From: Lama glama | Taxonomy: Eukaryota | NCBI GenBank assembly: GCA_028534125.1 | Contig: CM052848.1 | Coordinates: forward strand, 13,082,001 to 13,146,000 | DNA length: 64,000 bases | Direction of reading: 5' to 3' | Shown here: positions 337 through 64,000 of the stretch, piece by piece | How positions within the stretch are numbered: the first letter of the stretch is position 1 | How the letters are laid out: every line of letters begins with the position of its first letter | The notes under the pieces: generated by a model | Database searches by the model: none | What the model was told of the DNA's origin: nothing | The model's input: the letters and a program-made list of their open reading frames with translations, nothing else | Position numbers and translations under genes: made by a program

Positions 337-870
337 ATGCTACTCGGAGCGCCCAGGCTGTGCGCGTCCAGGGCGGCCGCCGCTGCGCAGAGCGAGGGCG
401 ACGGCGACAGGCTGGGCAGGGACATGGACGAGTCGTCGCTGCTGGACCTGCTGGAGTGCTCCGTGTGTCTGGAGCGCCTGGACACGACCGCCAAGGTGCT
501 GCCCTGCCAGCACACCTTCTGCCGCCGCTGCCTGGAGAGCATTGTGTGCTCGCGGCACGAGCTGCGCTGCCCGGAGTGCCGCATCCTGGTGGGCTGCGGC
601 GTGGACGAGCTGCCCGCCAACATCCTGCTGGTGCGCCTGCTGGACGGCATCCGCCAGCGTCCCCGCCCCGGCGCCAGCCCGGGCGGCAGCCCGCCCGCGC
701 GTCCTGGTCCCAGCCCGGGCCCGGGCCTCGGCTCCAGCCCGGAGGCGGCCTCGGCGCACGGGGATTGCGGGGGCAGCGCCCCTGGCTCTCCGGTCCTCCT
801 CTCCGCGGCGACCAGCGCCACCGCCAGCCTGCGCGAGCTGGCGACTGGCAGGAGCGCGCCCCTGGCGAAG
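337..870 (+). CDS. SH3RF3: SH3RF3/POSH2 coding exon 1 (178 codons): N-terminal extension, C3HC4 RING finger, Pro/Gly/Ser/Ala linker
   Basis: ATG at 337 gives [21 protein letters not shown]...[81 protein letters not shown], which I recognise as the SH3RF3 N-terminus (SH3RF1 has CPVC and lacks the MLLGA extension). It ends at AAG|GTGAGT, a consensus phase-0 donor at 871. Confidence 0.96.
457..579 (+). other. SH3RF3: RING-HC (C3HC4) zinc-finger coding segment
   Basis: CSVC...CQH..CRRC...CPEC; all eight metal ligands are intact. Confidence 0.95.
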
Positions 871-53748: not shown

Positions 53749-56161
53749 ATGAGAAGATCCCAAAATGCAGCTGCTCCATCAGGATAAAATACTGCTTTTT
53801 CACAGGACATGCAGGCTCTTCTCCACAAGGTCATCTGAGGACCCAGGTCCTTCCCTCCTTTGCTCAGAGTGTAATCCTTGTGGAAAAATCTGCCCCTATC
53901 ATGCTGTTCAGGCCATGGGAGGGGAGTTACAAGAAATGGAATTTCCTTCTAAATGTCATTACAAAACACAGCCCAGAATTGTCACGAGGCCCTCTTGCTT
54001 GCCTGCGTTGACTGGGATTTTGACACATGGCCAAGGCCCTTGTGAGCAAGGCTGGGAGGTGAAGTTGTTAGCTGCTGAGCTTGGCCGCAGTTGAAACTTG
54101 GAAGCTTCTCCCCTGCAGGAGGAGCTGGTGGACTCCGGGGATGACGGGCTGTCTCTGCCGCCGTCTCAGCCCTTGCTTTGCTTGACTGCGCTGGGCGTTC
54201 CCCCAAGGGGCTGCTCACCATCTGGGGAACTCCCTGGGATGTTTCTCCCCCATGAGGCAGGCCCAATGTCTCCAGCTCCAAGCCTTCGCTCAGCCTGGCT
54301 CCTGTTTGAGCGATCACTGGGATTTCCAGCCCTCTGGGCCCAGTATACAATAGGATTTGGGGCTACATGGACCCTGGACCTCCCATCCTGGGAACAGTCC
54401 TTCCAGCACAAGGCCCTTGGCCAGGCCCTAAGCCAGCGATTGGCGTGGCGGCCCACACGGTCATCCATTCGGTAGGTGTTTCGAGCATGTGGTCTGCCCA
54501 GGCCAGGGTCGGAAACGCAACATCCAGCAAAAGCAGGCCAGTGTCGTGCGGGGGGCAGGGAGTCTACAGGGAGCTCCACAGGTAGCATGTGCTACCTGGG
54601 GAGCACCGAGTAAGGAGAACCAGTGAGTCCTCTGTCCATGCTCTTCAGCCCAGCCTTCTAGGGGTTGGGCAGTGAGGCCTGGTCCCAGGGAAAGCACCCG
54701 GGAGCCTGGTGGGCAGCCCAGTGCACGCAGTGCATTTGTGAAGCTGGCCTACACGTTGACTGGGAGGTGATGGAGATGGGGCTGAGGTGCTGGCAGGGGG
54801 TCCCAGCGCTCCACGAGTAGGAAGTTGCACTGGCAAGACTGTGCAACATCTAAGTCATGCGCCGTGAGGTTGACACTGTCTTAATTATTACTAGTGCCCT
54901 GCAGGGTCTTGTGTTAATTATCCCACAGCATCCCTTTGTGTTTCCGTTTTGTCTCCCTTTTACTTCTTTTTCTGAGCGTCGTGAGCCTGCAGAGTGGGGC
55001 TCAGCGCAACATTTGACTCAGCAGTCCCTGCAAGGGGCGCACGCACAGTGAGCGCTCAGAGGACGGGCAGGGCCCTGCAGGCCTCCTGGGCTGGGCTGGG
55101 GACTGGGGTCAGGGGTCCTCTGACTGCTGCTGTATCATCCCAGGGGGGTCTTTCCCCATAAGAGTGTTCGCCTGCCCTGGGCCCTCGTCATGGACTAGTT
55201 AGTTAATCTCATAAAGGGCTTGAAGATGAAAGGGTGGAGGTGCTGAGAGCCACTGGCTCTGGGCGTTTCCTGGCAGTGAGATCTGGGTTCTCATGGCAGC
55301 TGCCCTCTCGGTGTCGTCTTTGCCCCCAGAATTGCGTTTTGGGTCGTAGAGGTTACTGCCCTCTCGGTTTTGCTCTGTGAGCAGCTGATGGTGGGGGTCT
55401 GGGGAGGCATTCGTGATCTGGGTGTACCCCGCTCTCCCGGCCCTGCTCCCCTTTCCCTCCTCTCGTCTCCTCCTTGTCCACCGAAGGGAGCAGACAAGCG
55501 TGGCTGCCTCCCAGATGTGGCTGGAGCCAGTGAGGTTGGTTGCTTGCTCCCAGCCCTGCACTTGGACCTTGAGGTCGGGCTCTGACCTCGGGGTCGGGGC
55601 CTGGCCACCCACTCGGTCCACCCCTGCCTGTGCTCAGAAGGCGTCTGTCCCCTCTCCAGGCTGGAACTCGTGGGAACTAGGGATGGCCTTTTCCCGGACC
55701 TCTGGGGGTGGGTTTACAGCGGTTGCCACTTCCCCACTGCCGTGCCCCAGGCCCCGTCTCAGAAATAACCTGAGCACACGGAATTAATGGGCACATCTCA
55801 GGCCCCTGCCATGTCAAGGGGTGGTTGAACAAGCACCTAGCTCTCTCTCCTGGGACCTCGATGTAACAGTGGCCATGCGGTTGGGGGACTGATGGACCAG
55901 AGGGTCCTGGGAGATGGGAGAGCGTGGGCCGTGGGCTGTGGTGGGAGGGGTGAGGGCAGGCGGCAGGGGTGGAGGAAGCAAGCGTGTGGTCTAGGGGAGT
56001 TACCGTGGTGGGCCCCTCTGCAGTGCCCTCCTCCAGCAGGGCTGTGGCCCTGTGTTCCTGTGACGGGCCCCCTCCTGGGCTCTCAGACACGGGCCCGCGG
56101 TCCGGGCACCAGGCAGGCCAGGTGGGCAGCCGCTGAGTAACCAGTCGTGTTCTGCTTTCAG

Positions 56162-56416
56162 AGCCTTCCCCAGCCGCCCTCCAGCAAAGTCCCGCACAGT
56201 CACGAGGGGAAGGAGCCCGGGGACCTCAGGTTCAGCAAGGGGGACGTCATTGTCCTGCGGCACCGGGTGGATGAGCACTGGTACCATGGCTTCCTGCCCA
56301 CCAGCTACGTCCCAGGCCTGCGGCCCCTGCCCCAGGCCCCACCCCAGGGCAAAGCGCTCTATGATTTCGAGATGAAAGACAGAGACCAGGACAAGGACTG
56401 TCTGACCTTCAGCAAG
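56162..56416 (+). CDS. SH3RF3: SH3RF3 coding exon 2 (85 codons): degenerate SH3 domain 1 and N-terminal half of SH3 domain 2
   Basis: [85 protein letters not shown] contains the POSH-family motifs [21 protein letters not shown] and [20 protein letters not shown]. Acceptor tttcAG, donor AAG|GTAAGG at 56417; 255 nt, no stops. Confidence 0.93.
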
Positions 56417-59400
56417 GTAAGGTGGGCTCCAAAGCAGCCGCCCCCCCCCACCGCCCAGCCGGGAGCCTGGGCCTCGCCGTCCCGGCAGATGTGACTCCCA
56501 GCCCTCCCTGAGCCTCCTCAGGGGAGAGCAGTGGTTTCTTCTTCCTGAGGGTCGGCTGGGTGGAAGGAGGGGGCACACAGCCAGCCAGACGCCTGCTGGT
56601 AACAGGGACAGGGCCCTCATTACCTGAGTCACAGTGTGTCCAGGGCTCATGGGCCCTGGAAGGGGGCTCTCTGGGGAAACTGCAGCAGCGACCCCCGTCA
56701 GGTCCTGGGGTGGGAGCTGGGCCCGGAAGCCAGCCTGTCATGGTCCCTCCTGGAGAGCACAGGGGTGGACACTTGTACTTGGGTCATTCAAAGTGGCCAG
56801 TGAGGCCACGGGACCTGGTTAGTGAGAAACCAGTAGCATTTACTGCGTGCTTGTCCTGGGGGTGCGTCAGGTGGAGGGGCCTGGTTTCTGGCCTCCCGGC
56901 CTCAGAGGCGTGAAGTGCAGAGGGGACAGAGGTGAACGTCCCTCCTCCCTGGCTTCCCCACCTCCTCCTGCTCCGCAGGCTTCTGCCTGGCAGCAGCCGT
57001 GAAGTTACCTTCATTAATTAGTTAATTGCCTCTAGGACCACCAGGGTCCCCAGGGAGAGGTGGGAGCCTGTCTGCCCACGGTCAAAGCTCTAAGAGGCTG
57101 TGTTGCCACCTGGGGCTCGCTGGGCCCCGCCCTCCCCCACCTCCCAGTCCTGTCTCCTCCCGCCTCTCCCGGGCTCCCATCTCACTGCCTCTCAGGCGGG
57201 TGGGCGCGCGGGTGTAAACAGAGCTGGACTGCAGCTCCATCTCCGACTTCAGAGCCCACGGCAGCTCACCGTGCTTCTCCCGTCTGCTCGGCGCAGAACC
57301 TGGCTGTGAGTCCCCAGCGCTCCGCTTTGAGCAAAACTGGCTGGTTCTGTGCAGGCCTCACGCCGGCTGCCACTTGTGTCTTGTTCCCATTGTTCAGCCT
57401 GACGGTGAATGGTCTGCTTTCACTCAGGGATTCAGCTCTTTCCTCCTCCCTTCCATCAAGGTGTTCTGGTGATAATTCCCATTGTCATCTGGCCCTGCAG
57501 CTCCCTGGAGCAGCACCAGCCTCCCCCTCCCTCCCCCCCCACTCCCCCCCCAGGAGGCCCTCATGCTCACTTCTCCGCCCAGCCCCCCGAGAGACCCCTG
57601 GGCCCTGGCACTCTGCTATCACTTGGGACCAAGAGCAGAAACTCCCACTGCCCCTTGGGGTCTGGTCAGGCCCTTGTAAGGAGACAGACCTGTCATGGGT
57701 CCAGGCACAGACGCAGGGCGCTCCTCACAGCCTTCATGGCAGGAGACCTCACCAAGCAGGCAGCTGGCCACAGAGCTGGGGCCTCCAGTGTCTCCTGGCA
57801 AAGCCTCCCTCCCTTCACCTCCATCACCTGCTCCACGTACGAGCCTCTGCTTGGGACTCTCATCACTGGGGTGAAGAACAGAGCCCACTGGACGAGAGGA
57901 CAGAGGGGCATGTGTCCACTTGTCAACCAAACGTGCCGGCCTGACCCTGCCCTGGCGCCTGATGCCTGGCGGGAGAGATGGGGACACCAGTCCAGGGTCA
58001 TGTGTCTGGAGGACAGTTCCCGAGCATGAAGGGCTTGCGGGTCTCCCAGGGGGCAGACAGGGGTCTCGTAAGCACTGCACAGTCACATGGTGTTTAATGT
58101 CTGGTATTTCCAAAGAAGTCTTAAAGCCGCCTTCGTGGGAAAAGCGGGAACTCGTCCTGTGGTGGCGCCACTTGAGCTTTGCATCCCGCGGGGTCTGGGT
58201 CCTGGCGCCCGGCTGTGATGGGGGCGACCCCGTGGGCGGGGGTGTGGCCAGGAGGGGCAGACTTGGCGGCTCCTCCATGGGCACCCAGTGCGGGTGAGGG
58301 TGCGGGGCGGGGCGCGGACCTCAGGCCACTCTTCCAGGGCTTTCTTTCCTTCAATCCGTGTATGAACGTGGGAAGTTGGAGACCCCCGGGTGAGACTTCG
58401 GTGGGGACAGTGCTGGGACTCCCCCACGTGTTCCCTGCCGTGCTCACCCAAGCTTTATACCAGCACCCCGTGGGCCCCCTGCTCAGATGAGGGCACAGCT
58501 CCCGCACCCAGGCACCTGCTCTTTCTCATCTCTCACCCCCAGGTGCCTCCAGACAGCCTCCAAGGGGCATGAGCGAGGCCTCCTGGCTCTCCTGGCGGGT
58601 TTGCTGCCCGCGGGGCCGCTGAAGTTTCCCTCCGCTTGCTGGAACGCTGCTCTGACAGCCTGTCACCTGAAGTGGCCACGTGGTTCAGGCAGCTCGGTTT
58701 TGCTTCCAGGGAATGTTTTGTTGTTCGGATATGTCCATTCTGGCCTCAGCAAGGAAAGAGGGGGCGTCTCAAGTCCGTGGAGGATGCCTTTACCTTTAAG
58801 GAGCCTTGCTGTGATGGAATCGATTCGGTTTAAGACGGCACGAGGCATGAGCACCAAGGCAAGGCTCGCCCTTAGTGGCAGCTTCCGAACAGTCCTATTA
58901 AACTGCATTGATTGAAGCCACTCGAAAACCAGTCTTCGTTTCGTTTAGGAGGGGAAAGAATAGTTGCTTCTTGTAAAGCAGCTATAAAAAGCGAGTTTCA
59001 TAATTTCTTAGCAGCCTCACTTCAAAAAAGCTGAGCACGTGCGAACAAAAAGACAAAAGGAAGCAGCGCAGCGTCCCCTCTGTCAGCAGTTCTTTCGAGC
59101 TCTCCGTAGGCCTCTGGGGCACTGCCCTCCACGTGGCAGGGAGAGGCTCCGGCATCAGGGGCCCTGGGTGCAGGGCCTTCATGGTTAGGGGTCCCCGTGT
59201 GAGCTCAGCCCTGTGGCGTCAGGAGCCCATGTGTGACTCATCTCAGAGGTACCGGCACCCGAGCCGCAGTGGGACCCAGGCCCACCATCGCAGCCCCTGC
59301 TCATCCTCATCTCATGCCCCCCCTCCCCACTCAGCCCTGCAGGGCCCGAGGTGAGCTCCGAGTCAGCAGAGAGCACTGTTAAAACACCTCTGGTTGTCCT

Positions 59401-61456: not shown

Positions 61457-63898
61457 TTTTTAAAATTGACTTAATTTGTAGAGGAGTTTCAGGTTCATGC
61501 CTGAATTGAGCAGAAGGTACAAAGATTTTCCATACACCCTGCCCCGGCGTGCACAGCCTGCCCCGCTGTCAGCATTCCCAGCAGATGGAGCATTTGTTGC
61601 CGCTGATAAACCCACGTTAACATGTAGTCACCACCCAAAGCACATAGTGTACATTACTGTTCAGTCTGGGTGTTGTCTATCCTACGGGTTTGGACAAATG
61701 TATAACGACATGTACGCACCATTCTAGAGTATCATACAGATGGTTTCATGCCCTAAAACTCCTCTGTGCTCCACCTAAGCCTGCCTCCCTCCCCACAGCT
61801 CCTAGCGATCGCTGATGCTTTCCCTGTGTCCCCACAGTTTTGCCTTTTTCAGAACGTCATTTTGTTGNNNNNNNNNNNNNNNNNNNNNNNNNNNNNNNNN
61901 NNNNNNNNNNNNNNNNNNNNNNNNNNNNNNNNNNNNNNNNNNNNNNNNNNNNNNNNNNNNNNNNNNNNNNNNNNNNNNNNNNNNNNNNNNNNNNNNNNNN
62001 NNNNNNNNNNNNNNNNNNNNNNNNNNNNNNNNNNNNNNNNNNNTGTTGCTTCCAAGTTTGGTTGCTGTGAACCCCCACGTGCAGGTTTTCATATGGACAT
62101 GTTTTCAGCTCGTTCCAGTAAATACCAGGGAGTGTGACTGCTGGATTGCATGGCAAAAGTACATTTAGTTTTGTAAGAAACCTCCGAACTTTCTTCCAAG
62201 GTGGCCGTGCCATTTCCCTTCACACCAGCAGTGACAAGAGTTCCTGTTGCTCCACATCCTCACCAGCGCCTGGTGTTGTCAGGGTTTGGGTCTTGTCCAT
62301 TCTAATAAGGTGTGTAGTGGTGTCTCATTGTTGTTTTAGTTTGCACCTCCCTGGTGACATATGATGTGGAGTATTTGCCATCTGTGTGTCTCCTTTTGTG
62401 AGGTGTGTGTTAAGGGCTTTGGCCCATTNNNNNNNNNNNNNNNNNNNNNNNNNNNNNNNNNNNNNNNNNNNNNNNNNNNNNNNNNNNNNNNNNNNNNNNN
62501 NNNNNNNNNNNNNNNNNNNNNNNNNNNNNNNNNNNNNNNNNNNNNNNNNNNNNNNNNNNNNNNNNNNNNNNNNNNNNNNNNNNNNNNNNNNNNNNNNNNN
62601 NNNNNNNNNNNNNNNNNNNNNNNNNNNNNNNACCAGCCTTTGATGTTGTATTCAGAAGTCATCACCAAACCCAAGGGCATTTGGATTTCCTCCTGTCGTC
62701 TTCTGAGAGTTTTACAGTTCTGCGTTTTACACTTAGAGCTGTGGTCCATTGTAACTTTTGTGAAAGATGTAAGGTCTGTGTCTAGATTCTTTTTTTCCCC
62801 ATGTGGTCGTCCGGTTGTTCTGGCCCCATTTGTTGAGGAGCCTCTTTGCTCATCGTAGTGCCTTCACCCCTTCATCAAAGACAAGTGGACCACATTTATG
62901 TGGGCCGCTTTCTGGGTTCTCCATTCTGTTCCATTGATCTATTTTTATATTCCGTCACAGTCCCACACTGTCTTCAGCACCGTAGCTTTACAGTAAGTCT
63001 CGAAGCCAGACAGCGTCAGTCTTTGTTCTTTTCTTTCAGGGTTGAGTTGGCTGTCCTGACCTTTCGCCTCTCCAGATACAGTTCAGAGTCAGTTTGCCAG
63101 GATCCACAAAAAAGCCTGCTGAGACTTTGACTGGGATTGCACTGAATCTAGAAGTTGCGAAAAACTGACCTTGTGACAATATCGAGCCCTCCTACCCATG
63201 AACATTGAACATCTGTTTATTTAGTTCATATTCGATTTTGTTCATCTGAGTTTTGTAACTTTCCTCATAAAGGCCTTGTACTATTTTGTTAGATTTATAC
63301 CTAAATCTAGACATAATCTAGGTGTGTGTTTCATGTTTTCAGGTGCTAATGTGAATGGTATTGTACCTTTAATGTCAAATTCCACTTGTTCATTGCTAGT
63401 GTATAGAAAAGTATTTAATTTTTGTGTTAATCTATATCCTGAAACCTTGCTATAATTGCTTATTGGTTGTAGTTTTCTGTTGATTNNNNNNNNNNNNNNN
63501 NNNNNNNNNNNNNNNNNNNNNNNNNNNNNNNNNNNNNNNNNNNNNNNNNNNNNNNNNNNNNNNNNNNNNNNNNNNNNNNNNNNNNNNNNNNNNNNNNNNN
63601 NNNNNNNNNNNNNNNNNTGAAAGGCTTTGGTTAAAAAGGACATCTTTGCCTTGTTTTTGGTCTTAGGAAAAGCTTCACATTTCTCACCAATAAGAATGAT
63701 GTTAGCTGAAGGGTTTTGTAAATGTTCTTTTTCAAGTTGAGGAAGTTTCACTCTGTTTCGAATTTACTAATTACTATTTCTAATTTAAAAATCATGAATT
63801 GGTGTTTGATTTTTGTCAGATGCTTTTTCTGCATCTATTCATGTAAGGAGGTGATTTTTCTTCTTTAGCCCATTGATGTGATGGATTACATTCATTGA
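61457..63898 (-). mobile_element. L1MC-like element (3'UTR plus ORF2 part), antisense, interrupted by three N gaps
   Basis: ttttttaaaattgacttaatttgtagaggagtttcaggttca...gcagaaggtacaaagattttcc...gggtttggacaaatgtataacgacatg. The antisense ORF2 translation (63281-63751) includes ANIILIGEK..AFP and FLYTSNEQVE. Confidence 0.9.
61868..63617. other. Assembly gaps (N runs 61868-62043, 62429-62631, 63486-63617)
   Basis: Runs of n read directly; all lie inside L1 sequence. Confidence 0.98.
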
Positions 63899-64000
63899 TT
63901 TTTTTAAACATTTTTTTATTGAGTTATAGTCATTTTACAATGTTGTGTCAAATTCCAGTGTAGAGCAAATTTTTCAGTTATACATGAACATACATATATT
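63899..64000 (-). mobile_element. Young lineage-specific L1 3' end (camelid-type) nested in the L1MC; runs off the window
   Basis: T-tail followed by aaacatttttttattgagttatagtcattttacaatgttgtgtcaaattccagtgtagagc...tacatgaacatacatatatt, which I recognise from camelid L1 3' ends (recall). Confidence 0.75.

What the first reader, a model, noticed from the sequence alone, without database searches (positions are those of the whole stretch)
56162..56320. SH3 domain 1 of SH3RF3 appears degenerate while reading frame and splice sites are kept
Seen: exon 2 is open and phase-compatible, with good splice sites. The position of the SH3 ALYxY motif reads KVPHSHEG (VPHSH 56189-56203), whereas the second SH3 in the same exon keeps GKALYDFE and the RING in exon 1 is intact. 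Established: the aromatic residues of ALYxY form the PxxP-binding surface of SH3 domains; human SH3RF3 has GKALYSYEG here (recalled). Inference: this lineage may encode a POSH2 with an intact E3 ligase but a non-binding first SH3. That would be domain-selective loss of function in a JNK-pathway scaffold rather than pseudogenisation.
Basis: partly seen in the sequence, partly recalled or inferred. Interest (0 to 1): 0.8.

Follow-up and report, generated by a model that had tools for sequence, protein, structure and literature searches.

The report
Vestigial first SH3 domain in SH3RF3
The first SH3 domain of the SH3RF3 (POSH2) scaffold gene really is eroded in this camelid while the gene stays expressed and otherwise intact, but the damage is at least as old as the order Artiodactyla: camels, pigs, ruminants, hippos and whales all share it.

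Summary
**Observation confirmed.**
- Exon 2 (56162-56416) is open, phase 0/0, with good splice sites. The ALYxY position reads VPHSH at 56189-56203.
- RNA contigs from three studies join this exon to exon 1 and exon 3.
- At least 14 DNA runs hold the stretch.
- A second, larger lesion lies in the same domain: seven residues that form most of strand c, the distal loop and the start of strand d are missing (WYHG|FLP).

**Interpretation only partly right.**
- The decay is domain-selective and this is not a pseudogene. The RING and SH3-2, SH3-3 and SH3-4 are nearly invariant, and a full-length dromedary protein is annotated.
- It is not private to this lineage. The deletion and the loss of the first Tyr occur in Camelus, pig, peccary, buffalo, deer, hippo, baleen whales and toothed whales.
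- 220 other vertebrate SH3RF3 sequences keep the motif and the full length.
- Camelids add Ala-Leu to Val-Pro and the loss of the second Tyr.

**Rate of change.** The remnant now changes at the rate of the protein's linkers. In ruminants it changes two to three times faster.

**Not shown.** Loss of ligand binding is inferred, not tested.

**Prior reports.** No paper in the searched library mentions SH3RF3 together with artiodactyls or camels.

The parts
337..870 (+). Coding part of SH3RF3 exon 1 (ATG to donor; gtgagt at 871)
   Evidence: ORF and sequence. Pfam RING hits. Aligns to the N-terminus of dromedary P0334 and other mammals. Its last 28 nt are seen joined to exon 2 in an RNA contig.
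457..579 (+). C3HC4 RING finger, intact
   Evidence: Motif scan. Pfam zf-C3HC4 33.2 bits and zf-RING_UBOX 33.8 bits. 0/42 differences between camel and dog, pig, hippo or whale.
56160..56161 (+). Acceptor ag of intron 1, preceded by the pyrimidine tract ttctgctttc
   Evidence: Sequence. The RNA contig of run X17 carries the exon 1 end directly before 56162 (table 7).
56162..56416 (+). Exon 2, 255 nt, phase 0/0, open
   Evidence: RNA contigs cover exactly 56160/61-56417 in runs X15, X16 and X17 (table 8).
56162..56320 (+). Remnant of SH3 domain 1 (53 codons)
   Evidence: Pfam SH3_1 25.5 bits over profile 7-38 of 48, against 48.8-53.8 bits over 1-48 for intact exon-2 ORFs of other mammals. Best PDB match is SH3RF1 SH3-1, 7nzc.
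56189..56203 (+). Former ALYxY motif, now V-P-H-S-H (both Tyr lost; Pro in strand a)
   Evidence: Codons. Other artiodactyls read ALHSY, ALHSC, ALLNF or ALLNL. All other vertebrates read ALYSY or ALYNY.
56279..56299 (+). W-Y-H-G-F-L-P: site of the 21-nt (7-codon) in-frame deletion; Trp 56279-81 and Pro 56297-99 retained
   Evidence: Gap against 7nzc and against 15 non-artiodactyl mammals. In the dog model the missing residues are most of strand c, the distal turn and the first residue of strand d.
56321..56347 (+). Short linker RPLPQAPPQ between SH3-1 and SH3-2
   Evidence: Alignment.
56348..56416 (+). First 23 codons of SH3 domain 2 ([23 protein letters not shown]), conserved
   Evidence: SH3-2 diverges 0-7% among all mammals compared.
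56417..56422 (+). Donor gtaagg of intron 2
   Evidence: Sequence. In three RNA runs the contig continues past 56416 with letters that read DEVLTVIRRV, the start of exon 3 in camel proteins.

Best explanation
The window holds exons 1 and 2 of SH3RF3 (POSH2) of a camelid, probably a South American one. In other vertebrates exon 2 encodes SH3 domain 1 and the first strands of SH3 domain 2. Here SH3-1 is a vestige. It lacks both tyrosines of the ALYxY ligand-binding motif. It has a proline in strand a. It lacks seven residues that make up most of strand c, the distal loop and the start of strand d. The two main lesions (the deletion and the first Tyr to His) arose once, before the living artiodactyl suborders split, and every suborder sampled has them. 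Camelids later added AL to VP and the second Tyr to His. The gene went on working as a RING E3 ligase and scaffold with three sound SH3 domains. Exon 2 had to stay included and in frame because it also encodes the start of SH3-2. The remnant therefore persists as a linker-like segment under moderate constraint. Shown: the sequence lesions, their phylogenetic spread, expression and splicing, and conservation of the other domains. Inferred: the remnant no longer folds as an SH3 barrel or binds PxxP ligands, so the SH3-1/2-dependent contacts reported for human SH3RF3 (JIP3, JNK1) rest on SH3-2 alone or are weakened in artiodactyls.
For: Lesions. Pfam score halved and truncated (25.5 bits over profile 7-38/48, against 48.8-53.8 bits over the full profile). 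In buffalo SH3-1 is no longer detected (3 SH3 stretches against 4 in dog). The same deletion is in Camelus dromedarius, C. bactrianus, C. ferus, Sus, Catagonus, Bubalus, Muntiacus, Cervus, Hippopotamus, four whales and Logan ORFs. Census: 220 intact against 20 degenerate, all of the latter artiodactyl-type. The region is 84-95% identical from fish to mammals. Pairwise divergence of the remnant is 0.15-0.24 in non-ruminant artiodactyl pairs, equal to the linkers (0.17-0.19). It is 0.37-0.50 with ruminants and 0.09-0.13 in other mammals. RING and SH3-2/3/4 are 0-0.07 everywhere. The dromedary protein is full length with RING and C-terminal SH3-4. RNA contigs of three studies show exon 1-2 and exon 2-3 joints; 14 DNA-type runs under 4 organism labels hold the stretch. 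The dog model places the deleted residues in the strand c - distal loop - strand d hairpin. SH3 fold definition: PMC10453029. SH3-1 and SH3-2 of SH3RF3 bind JIP3 and JNK1: PMC7237486.
Against: The remnant is not neutral. The 26 residues [26 protein letters not shown] are identical in camel, pig and peccary. Between two camelid lineages exon 2 shows 1 difference where the intron rate predicts 7.7-8.6, and the SH3-1 part shows at most 1 where 4.8-5.4 are expected (P 0.03-0.05). The ligand-contacting Trp, Pro and the Tyr of the 3-10 turn are kept. Pfam SH3_1 still passes its cut-off (25.5 against 22.9). The structure prediction could not decide. The camel remnant has pLDDT 35-42, but the almost unchanged SH3-2 next to it also fell to about 30 in that model. 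No binding or folding data exist.
Confidence: 0.7

Rival explanations
1. The remnant is not a vestige but a remodelled module. It could be a shortened SH3-like or beta-hairpin element that kept or gained a non-canonical binding or intramolecular role, and it is held by purifying selection.
For: The 26-residue core is identical in camel, pig and peccary. Exon 2 is about eight times more conserved than the flanking introns between camelid lineages. Trp, Pro and the 3-10 Tyr are retained. The camel model still draws a strand b - strand c hairpin at 207-223.
Against: The overall rate equals that of the disordered linkers. Ruminants changed 8 of the 26 core residues and 37-50% of the remnant without losing the gene. 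Whales and camelids each lost the second Tyr independently. Part of the nucleotide conservation may serve exon inclusion.
Confidence: 0.22
2. One reading: a loss of SH3-1 function specific to the camelid lineage.
For: AL to VP and the second Tyr to His are found only in camelids.
Against: The deletion and the first Tyr loss are present in all four artiodactyl suborders.
Confidence: 0.04
3. The whole gene is decaying (unitary pseudogene), or the exon is an assembly error.
For: None beyond the degenerate motif itself.
Against: The frame is open, the splice sites are used in RNA and the exon 3 sequence follows. Camel proteins are full length with conserved RING and SH3-2/3/4. The same sequence is in three Camelus assemblies and in 14 DNA-type runs of at least 6 studies.
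Confidence: 0.02

Closest known systems
SH3RF3 / POSH2 of other mammals (e.g. dog P0347, gibbon P0367, elephant P0217)
   Same: Orthologous gene. The RING is identical, exon 2 has the same boundaries, and SH3-2, SH3-3, SH3-4 and the linker motifs are conserved.
   Different: SH3-1 lacks ALYxY and seven residues of the distal hairpin. Its Pfam score is halved.
SH3RF3 of other artiodactyls (pig P0333, hippo P0275, whales P0330/P0332, buffalo P0353)
   Same: The same 7-residue deletion and loss of the first Tyr. The N-terminal region is also shortened in the same way.
   Different: Camelids alone have VP for AL and His for the second Tyr. Ruminants are far more diverged (ALLNF, 37-50% changed).
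SH3RF2 (POSHER), the family member with only three SH3 domains
   Same: A RING plus three working SH3 domains is a viable architecture in this family (PMC7237486).
   Different: SH3RF2 lacks the fourth SH3 (the one reported to bind MKK7). Here the first is the one lost, and as a remnant, not a clean absence.
SH3RF1 (POSH) SH3-1, PDB 7nzc
   Same: Best solved-structure match of exon 2 (E 3.3e-17).
   Different: 7nzc has ALYNY and the GEVNGIH segment that the window lacks.

Membership tests
SH3RF3 (POSH2) orthologue | N-terminal C3HC4 RING finger | tested here: met
   Window 457-579. Pfam RING models pass. Identical to other mammals.
SH3RF3 (POSH2) orthologue | Closest relatives are annotated SH3RF3, not SH3RF1 or SH3RF2 | tested here: met
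   Exon 2 is identical to P0335 and one residue from Camelus SH3RF3 (P0273, P0274, P0334). SH3RF1-type hits score lower.
SH3RF3 (POSH2) orthologue | Four SH3 domains | tested here: inconclusive
   Pfam counts 4 SH3_1 stretches in dromedary P0334 but only 3 SH3_2 stretches, and 3 in buffalo. SH3-1 is a truncated match. SH3-3 and SH3-4 lie outside the window.
SH3RF3 (POSH2) orthologue | Expressed and correctly spliced | tested here: met
   Exon 1-2 and exon 2-3 joints in RNA contigs of a closely related camelid.
Canonical SH3 domain (PF00018) | ALYxY motif with two aromatic residues | tested here: not met
   V-P-H-S-H at 56189-56203.
Canonical SH3 domain (PF00018) | Five strands including the strand c - distal loop - strand d hairpin | tested here: not met
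   Seven residues missing. Mapped on the strands of the dog model.
Canonical SH3 domain (PF00018) | Full-length profile match above the gathering score | tested here: inconclusive
   25.5 bits against cut-off 22.9, but only profile positions 7-38 of 48. SH3_9 scores 26.3, below its cut-off of 30.
Canonical SH3 domain (PF00018) | Conserved Trp at the start of strand c, and Pro/Tyr of the 3-10 turn | tested here: met
   W 56279-81, P 56297-99, Y 56306-08.
Canonical SH3 domain (PF00018) | Binds proline-rich ligands | not testable with these tools
   Needs peptide or partner binding assays.
Unitary pseudogene | Stops, frameshifts, lost splice sites or lost expression | tested here: not met
   None in exons 1-2. 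Spliced RNA. Full-length camel proteins.

The most novel reading that the evidence does not exclude
A single 21-nt deletion plus a Tyr to His change on the artiodactyl stem disabled one of four SH3 domains of a JNK-pathway scaffold. For some 60 million years the whole order (camels, pigs, ruminants, hippos, whales) has then run SH3RF3 with a remodelled N-terminal module. That module is still under selection in most lineages, so it would be a repurposed non-canonical element and a clean rare genomic change marking Artiodactyla.
Probability: 0.2. Interest if true: 0.6.

Novelty: new variant of a known kind. Interest (0 to 1): 0.42.

Why it matters
SH3RF3 is studied as a JNK/NF-kB scaffold in cancer, Alzheimer's disease and autism models. 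Its SH3-1/2 region is reported to hold JIP3 and JNK1. An entire mammalian order, including all major livestock, carries a natural version with a crippled SH3-1 and everything else conserved. That is a ready-made separation-of-function allele. It can show what SH3-1 contributes. It also warns against carrying domain-level annotation ('four SH3 domains') from human to pig, cattle or camel. The shared 7-codon deletion is also a simple marker for the order. It is not a new kind of biology, because erosion of one domain in a multidomain protein is a known pattern.

Tried and rejected
No DNA of other species could be fetched, so no codon-level dN/dS was run. Protein-level rates were used instead.
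2. The first word search used a fish query and returned mostly fish. It was useful only to show how conserved the region normally is.
3. Full-length AlphaFold2 runs were made on the dromedary (A1) and dog (A2) proteins with the same 51-sequence alignment.
 - The dog gives pLDDT about 90 for all four SH3 domains.
 - The camel model is poor in the whole N-terminal half, including the nearly unchanged SH3-2. The low confidence of the remnant therefore cannot be read as evidence.
4. Parsimony counts first showed an apparent burst in SH3-3. This came from a mis-annotated peccary model and was discarded.
5. Literature:
 - SH3RF3 with 'artiodactyl' or 'camel' gave no paper.
 - A broader search gave nothing relevant.
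 - PMC1369250 is not held.
6. The GC-biased-conversion idea of note s1-861254 was not tested, because ancestral codons are unavailable. Only GC3 of exon 2 (0.84) and flank GC (0.63-0.64) were measured.
 - N runs were left untouched.

Full report
**What is in the window**

On the + strand the window carries the first two coding exons of SH3RF3 (POSH2).
- Exon 1 runs from ATG 337 to 870, followed by gtgagt.
- Exon 1 encodes an intact C3HC4 RING at 457-579. Pfam RING models pass their cut-offs.
- Exon 2 runs 56162-56416. It follows ...ttctgctttcag and is followed by gtaagg.
- Exon 2 has 255 nt, 85 codons and no stop.
- The codons GTC CCG CAC AGT CAC at 56189-56203 read V-P-H-S-H, as the finding says.
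- The second SH3 starts with GKALYDFE at 56348.
- Exon 3 is not in the window.

**A second lesion**

Against the solved SH3-1 of SH3RF1 (7nzc, E 3.3e-17) exon 2 shows two differences. ALYNY is replaced by VPHSH, and there is a 7-residue gap between W-Y-H and G-F.

In the AlphaFold2 model of the dog orthologue, SH3-1 has pLDDT about 90. The missing residues there are most of strand c, the distal turn and the first residue of strand d. The SH3 fold is a five-stranded barrel joined by the RT, n-Src and distal loops and a 3-10 helix (PMC10453029). The remnant therefore lacks a core hairpin.

Pfam agrees:

| Sequence | Pfam SH3_1 result |
|---|---|
| Remnant alone | 25.5 bits, profile positions 7-38 of 48 |
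| Intact exon-2 ORFs of other mammals (P0011, P0009) | 53.8 and 48.8 bits, full profile |

The Trp of strand c and the Pro and Tyr of the 3-10 turn are kept.

**The sequence is real and the exon is expressed**
- 14 DNA-type runs under four organism labels, from at least six studies, hold 93-100% of the sampled words of exon 2 plus 100 nt on each side.
- A DNA contig of an independent study spans 54900-57161 with no difference inside the exon.
- Five RNA runs hold about the exon's share of the words.
- In three of them, from three studies, a contig covers exactly 56160/61-56417. Depth there is 24, 7 and 35, against 0-5 in the flanking introns.
- Each of these contigs runs on with letters that read DEVLTVIRRV together with the G at 56417. 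That is the start of exon 3 in the camel proteins.
- One contig is preceded by the last 28 nt of exon 1 (protein).
- These RNA contigs differ from the window by one letter in the exon and by 3.0-3.4% in intron pieces. They carry the dromedary's Val in APLVK, so they come from Camelus.

**Which species the window comes from**

The window differs from all three Camelus proteins at one residue: Ser at 56183-85 where they have Gly. It is identical to P0335. This points to a South American camelid. That is an inference, because organism names were coded.

**Who else has the lesions**

A full-library HMMER search with exon 2 found two 85-for-85 matches without the gap.
- One is from Camelus ferus (EPY87060.1).
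- The other is an unnamed ORF family that later proved to match toothed-whale sequences.

Word searches with the camel and hippo exon-2 regions and their sequences gave this picture:

| Group | Motif at the ALYxY position | 7-residue deletion |
|---|---|---|
| Camelus dromedarius, C. bactrianus, C. ferus | VPHSH | yes |
| Pig, peccary, hippo | ALHSY | yes |
| Gray, humpback and minke whales, orca, vaquita | ALHSC | yes |
| Buffalo, muntjac, deer | ALLNF / ALLNL | yes |
| Pangolin | ALHSY | no |

Dog, walrus, bats, mole, shrews, primates, rodents, afrotherians, marsupials, frogs and fish are intact.

Of 243 sequences with the SH3-2 anchor:
- 220 are intact.
- 20 have both lesions, and all 20 are artiodactyl or match artiodactyl sequences.
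- The other three are the pangolin, one conservative AIYTY variant and one fragment with a different internal gap.

The deletion and the first Tyr to His change therefore arose once, before the four living suborders split. Leu in ruminants is one step from His. Camelids added AL to VP and the second Tyr to His. Whales independently changed the second Tyr to Cys.

**The rest of the gene**

The full-length dromedary protein P0334 (846 aa) has the RING and ends with the conserved SH3-4. Divergence between camel and other artiodactyls:

| Region | Divergence |
|---|---|
| RING | 0-5% |
| SH3-2 | 0-5% |
| SH3-3 | 4% (excluding a mis-annotated peccary segment) |
| SH3-4 | 0% (excluding the truncated hippo isoform) |

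This is not a pseudogene.

**How the remnant evolves**

Pairwise amino-acid divergence:

| Comparison | SH3-1 or remnant | Linkers |
|---|---|---|
| Non-ruminant artiodactyl pairs at suborder depth | 0.15-0.24 | 0.17-0.19 |
| Pairs including a ruminant | 0.37-0.50 | 0.13-0.19 |
| Other mammals (intact SH3-1), excluding dog-pangolin and dog-walrus | 0.09-0.13 | 0.13-0.22 |

Constraint on the remnant has dropped to the linker level. In ruminants it is lower still. It is not zero, for two reasons.
- A 26-residue core is identical in camel, pig and peccary.
- Between the two camelid lineages the SH3-1 part shows at most one difference where the intron rate predicts about five (P 0.03-0.05).

Part of this may reflect the need to keep the exon included, because it also encodes the first strands of SH3-2.

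**Reading**

Artiodactyl SH3RF3 is best read as a RING ligase and scaffold with three sound SH3 domains and a vestigial first one. Human SH3RF3 needs SH3-1 and SH3-2 for JIP3 and JNK1, and SH3-4 for MKK7 (PMC7237486). The likely consequence is a weakened or SH3-2-only contact with JIP3 and JNK1. This is an inference.

The main rival is that the remnant is a remodelled element that still does something. The conserved core supports it. The free divergence in ruminants argues against it.

**Limits**
- The camel AlphaFold2 model was poor across the whole N-terminal half, including SH3-2. It therefore says nothing reliable about the remnant.
Exons were searched by reference, one at a time.
- No paper in the searched library links SH3RF3 with artiodactyls or camels.

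Noticed in passing
window 403-425 (exon 1...[14 protein letters not shown]): All artiodactyl SH3RF3 proteins, and the window, lack a stretch of about 12-19 residues (PGERRRRR-AAATAAGAGE-like) that other mammals have just before [12 protein letters not shown]. This is a second shared indel of the order in the same gene.
   Followed up: partly
window 55200-55722: RNA run X17 has a 523-nt contig here at depth 13.8, above the intron background of 4-5. It overlaps the ORF 55370-55585, pieces of which form the RING-less N-terminus of the NCBI dromedary model P0273. It may be an alternative 5' exon or promoter, or a retained intron. No splice joint was seen.
   Followed up: no
window 57100-57309: An intronic ORF. 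Its translation appears as a false exon in the Camelus ferus model P0002, a sign of mis-annotation downstream of exon 2. P0273 shares a different extra segment with P0002 (EPTCDSS...SAPFQ, just before exon 3), which does not lie in this window. P0274 and P0335 carry a false segment in place of SH3-3.
   Followed up: partly
Protein P0336 (Manis javanica): Pangolin SH3RF3 has ALHSY (the same first Tyr to His) but no deletion. Its SH3-1 differs from dog at 10/53 positions, about the linker rate (0.19 against 0.17). This may be an independent relaxation of the same domain.
   Followed up: partly
Protein P0337 (unnamed Logan assembly, 874 aa): An intact SH3-1 that already shows artiodactyl-like states ([18 protein letters not shown]). 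It may be from a close outgroup such as a perissodactyl. The species is unknown.
   Followed up: no
window 56430-56450: A poly-C run just after the exon 2 donor. An independent DNA run has two extra C after 56440, a length polymorphism or homopolymer error in the intron.
   Followed up: no
window 61868-63617 and 62001-64000: Three N runs (176, 203 and 132 nt) lie inside an AT-rich stretch (GC 0.32, against 0.56 for the whole window). It looks like a repeat-rich piece of intron 2. It was left untouched.
   Followed up: no
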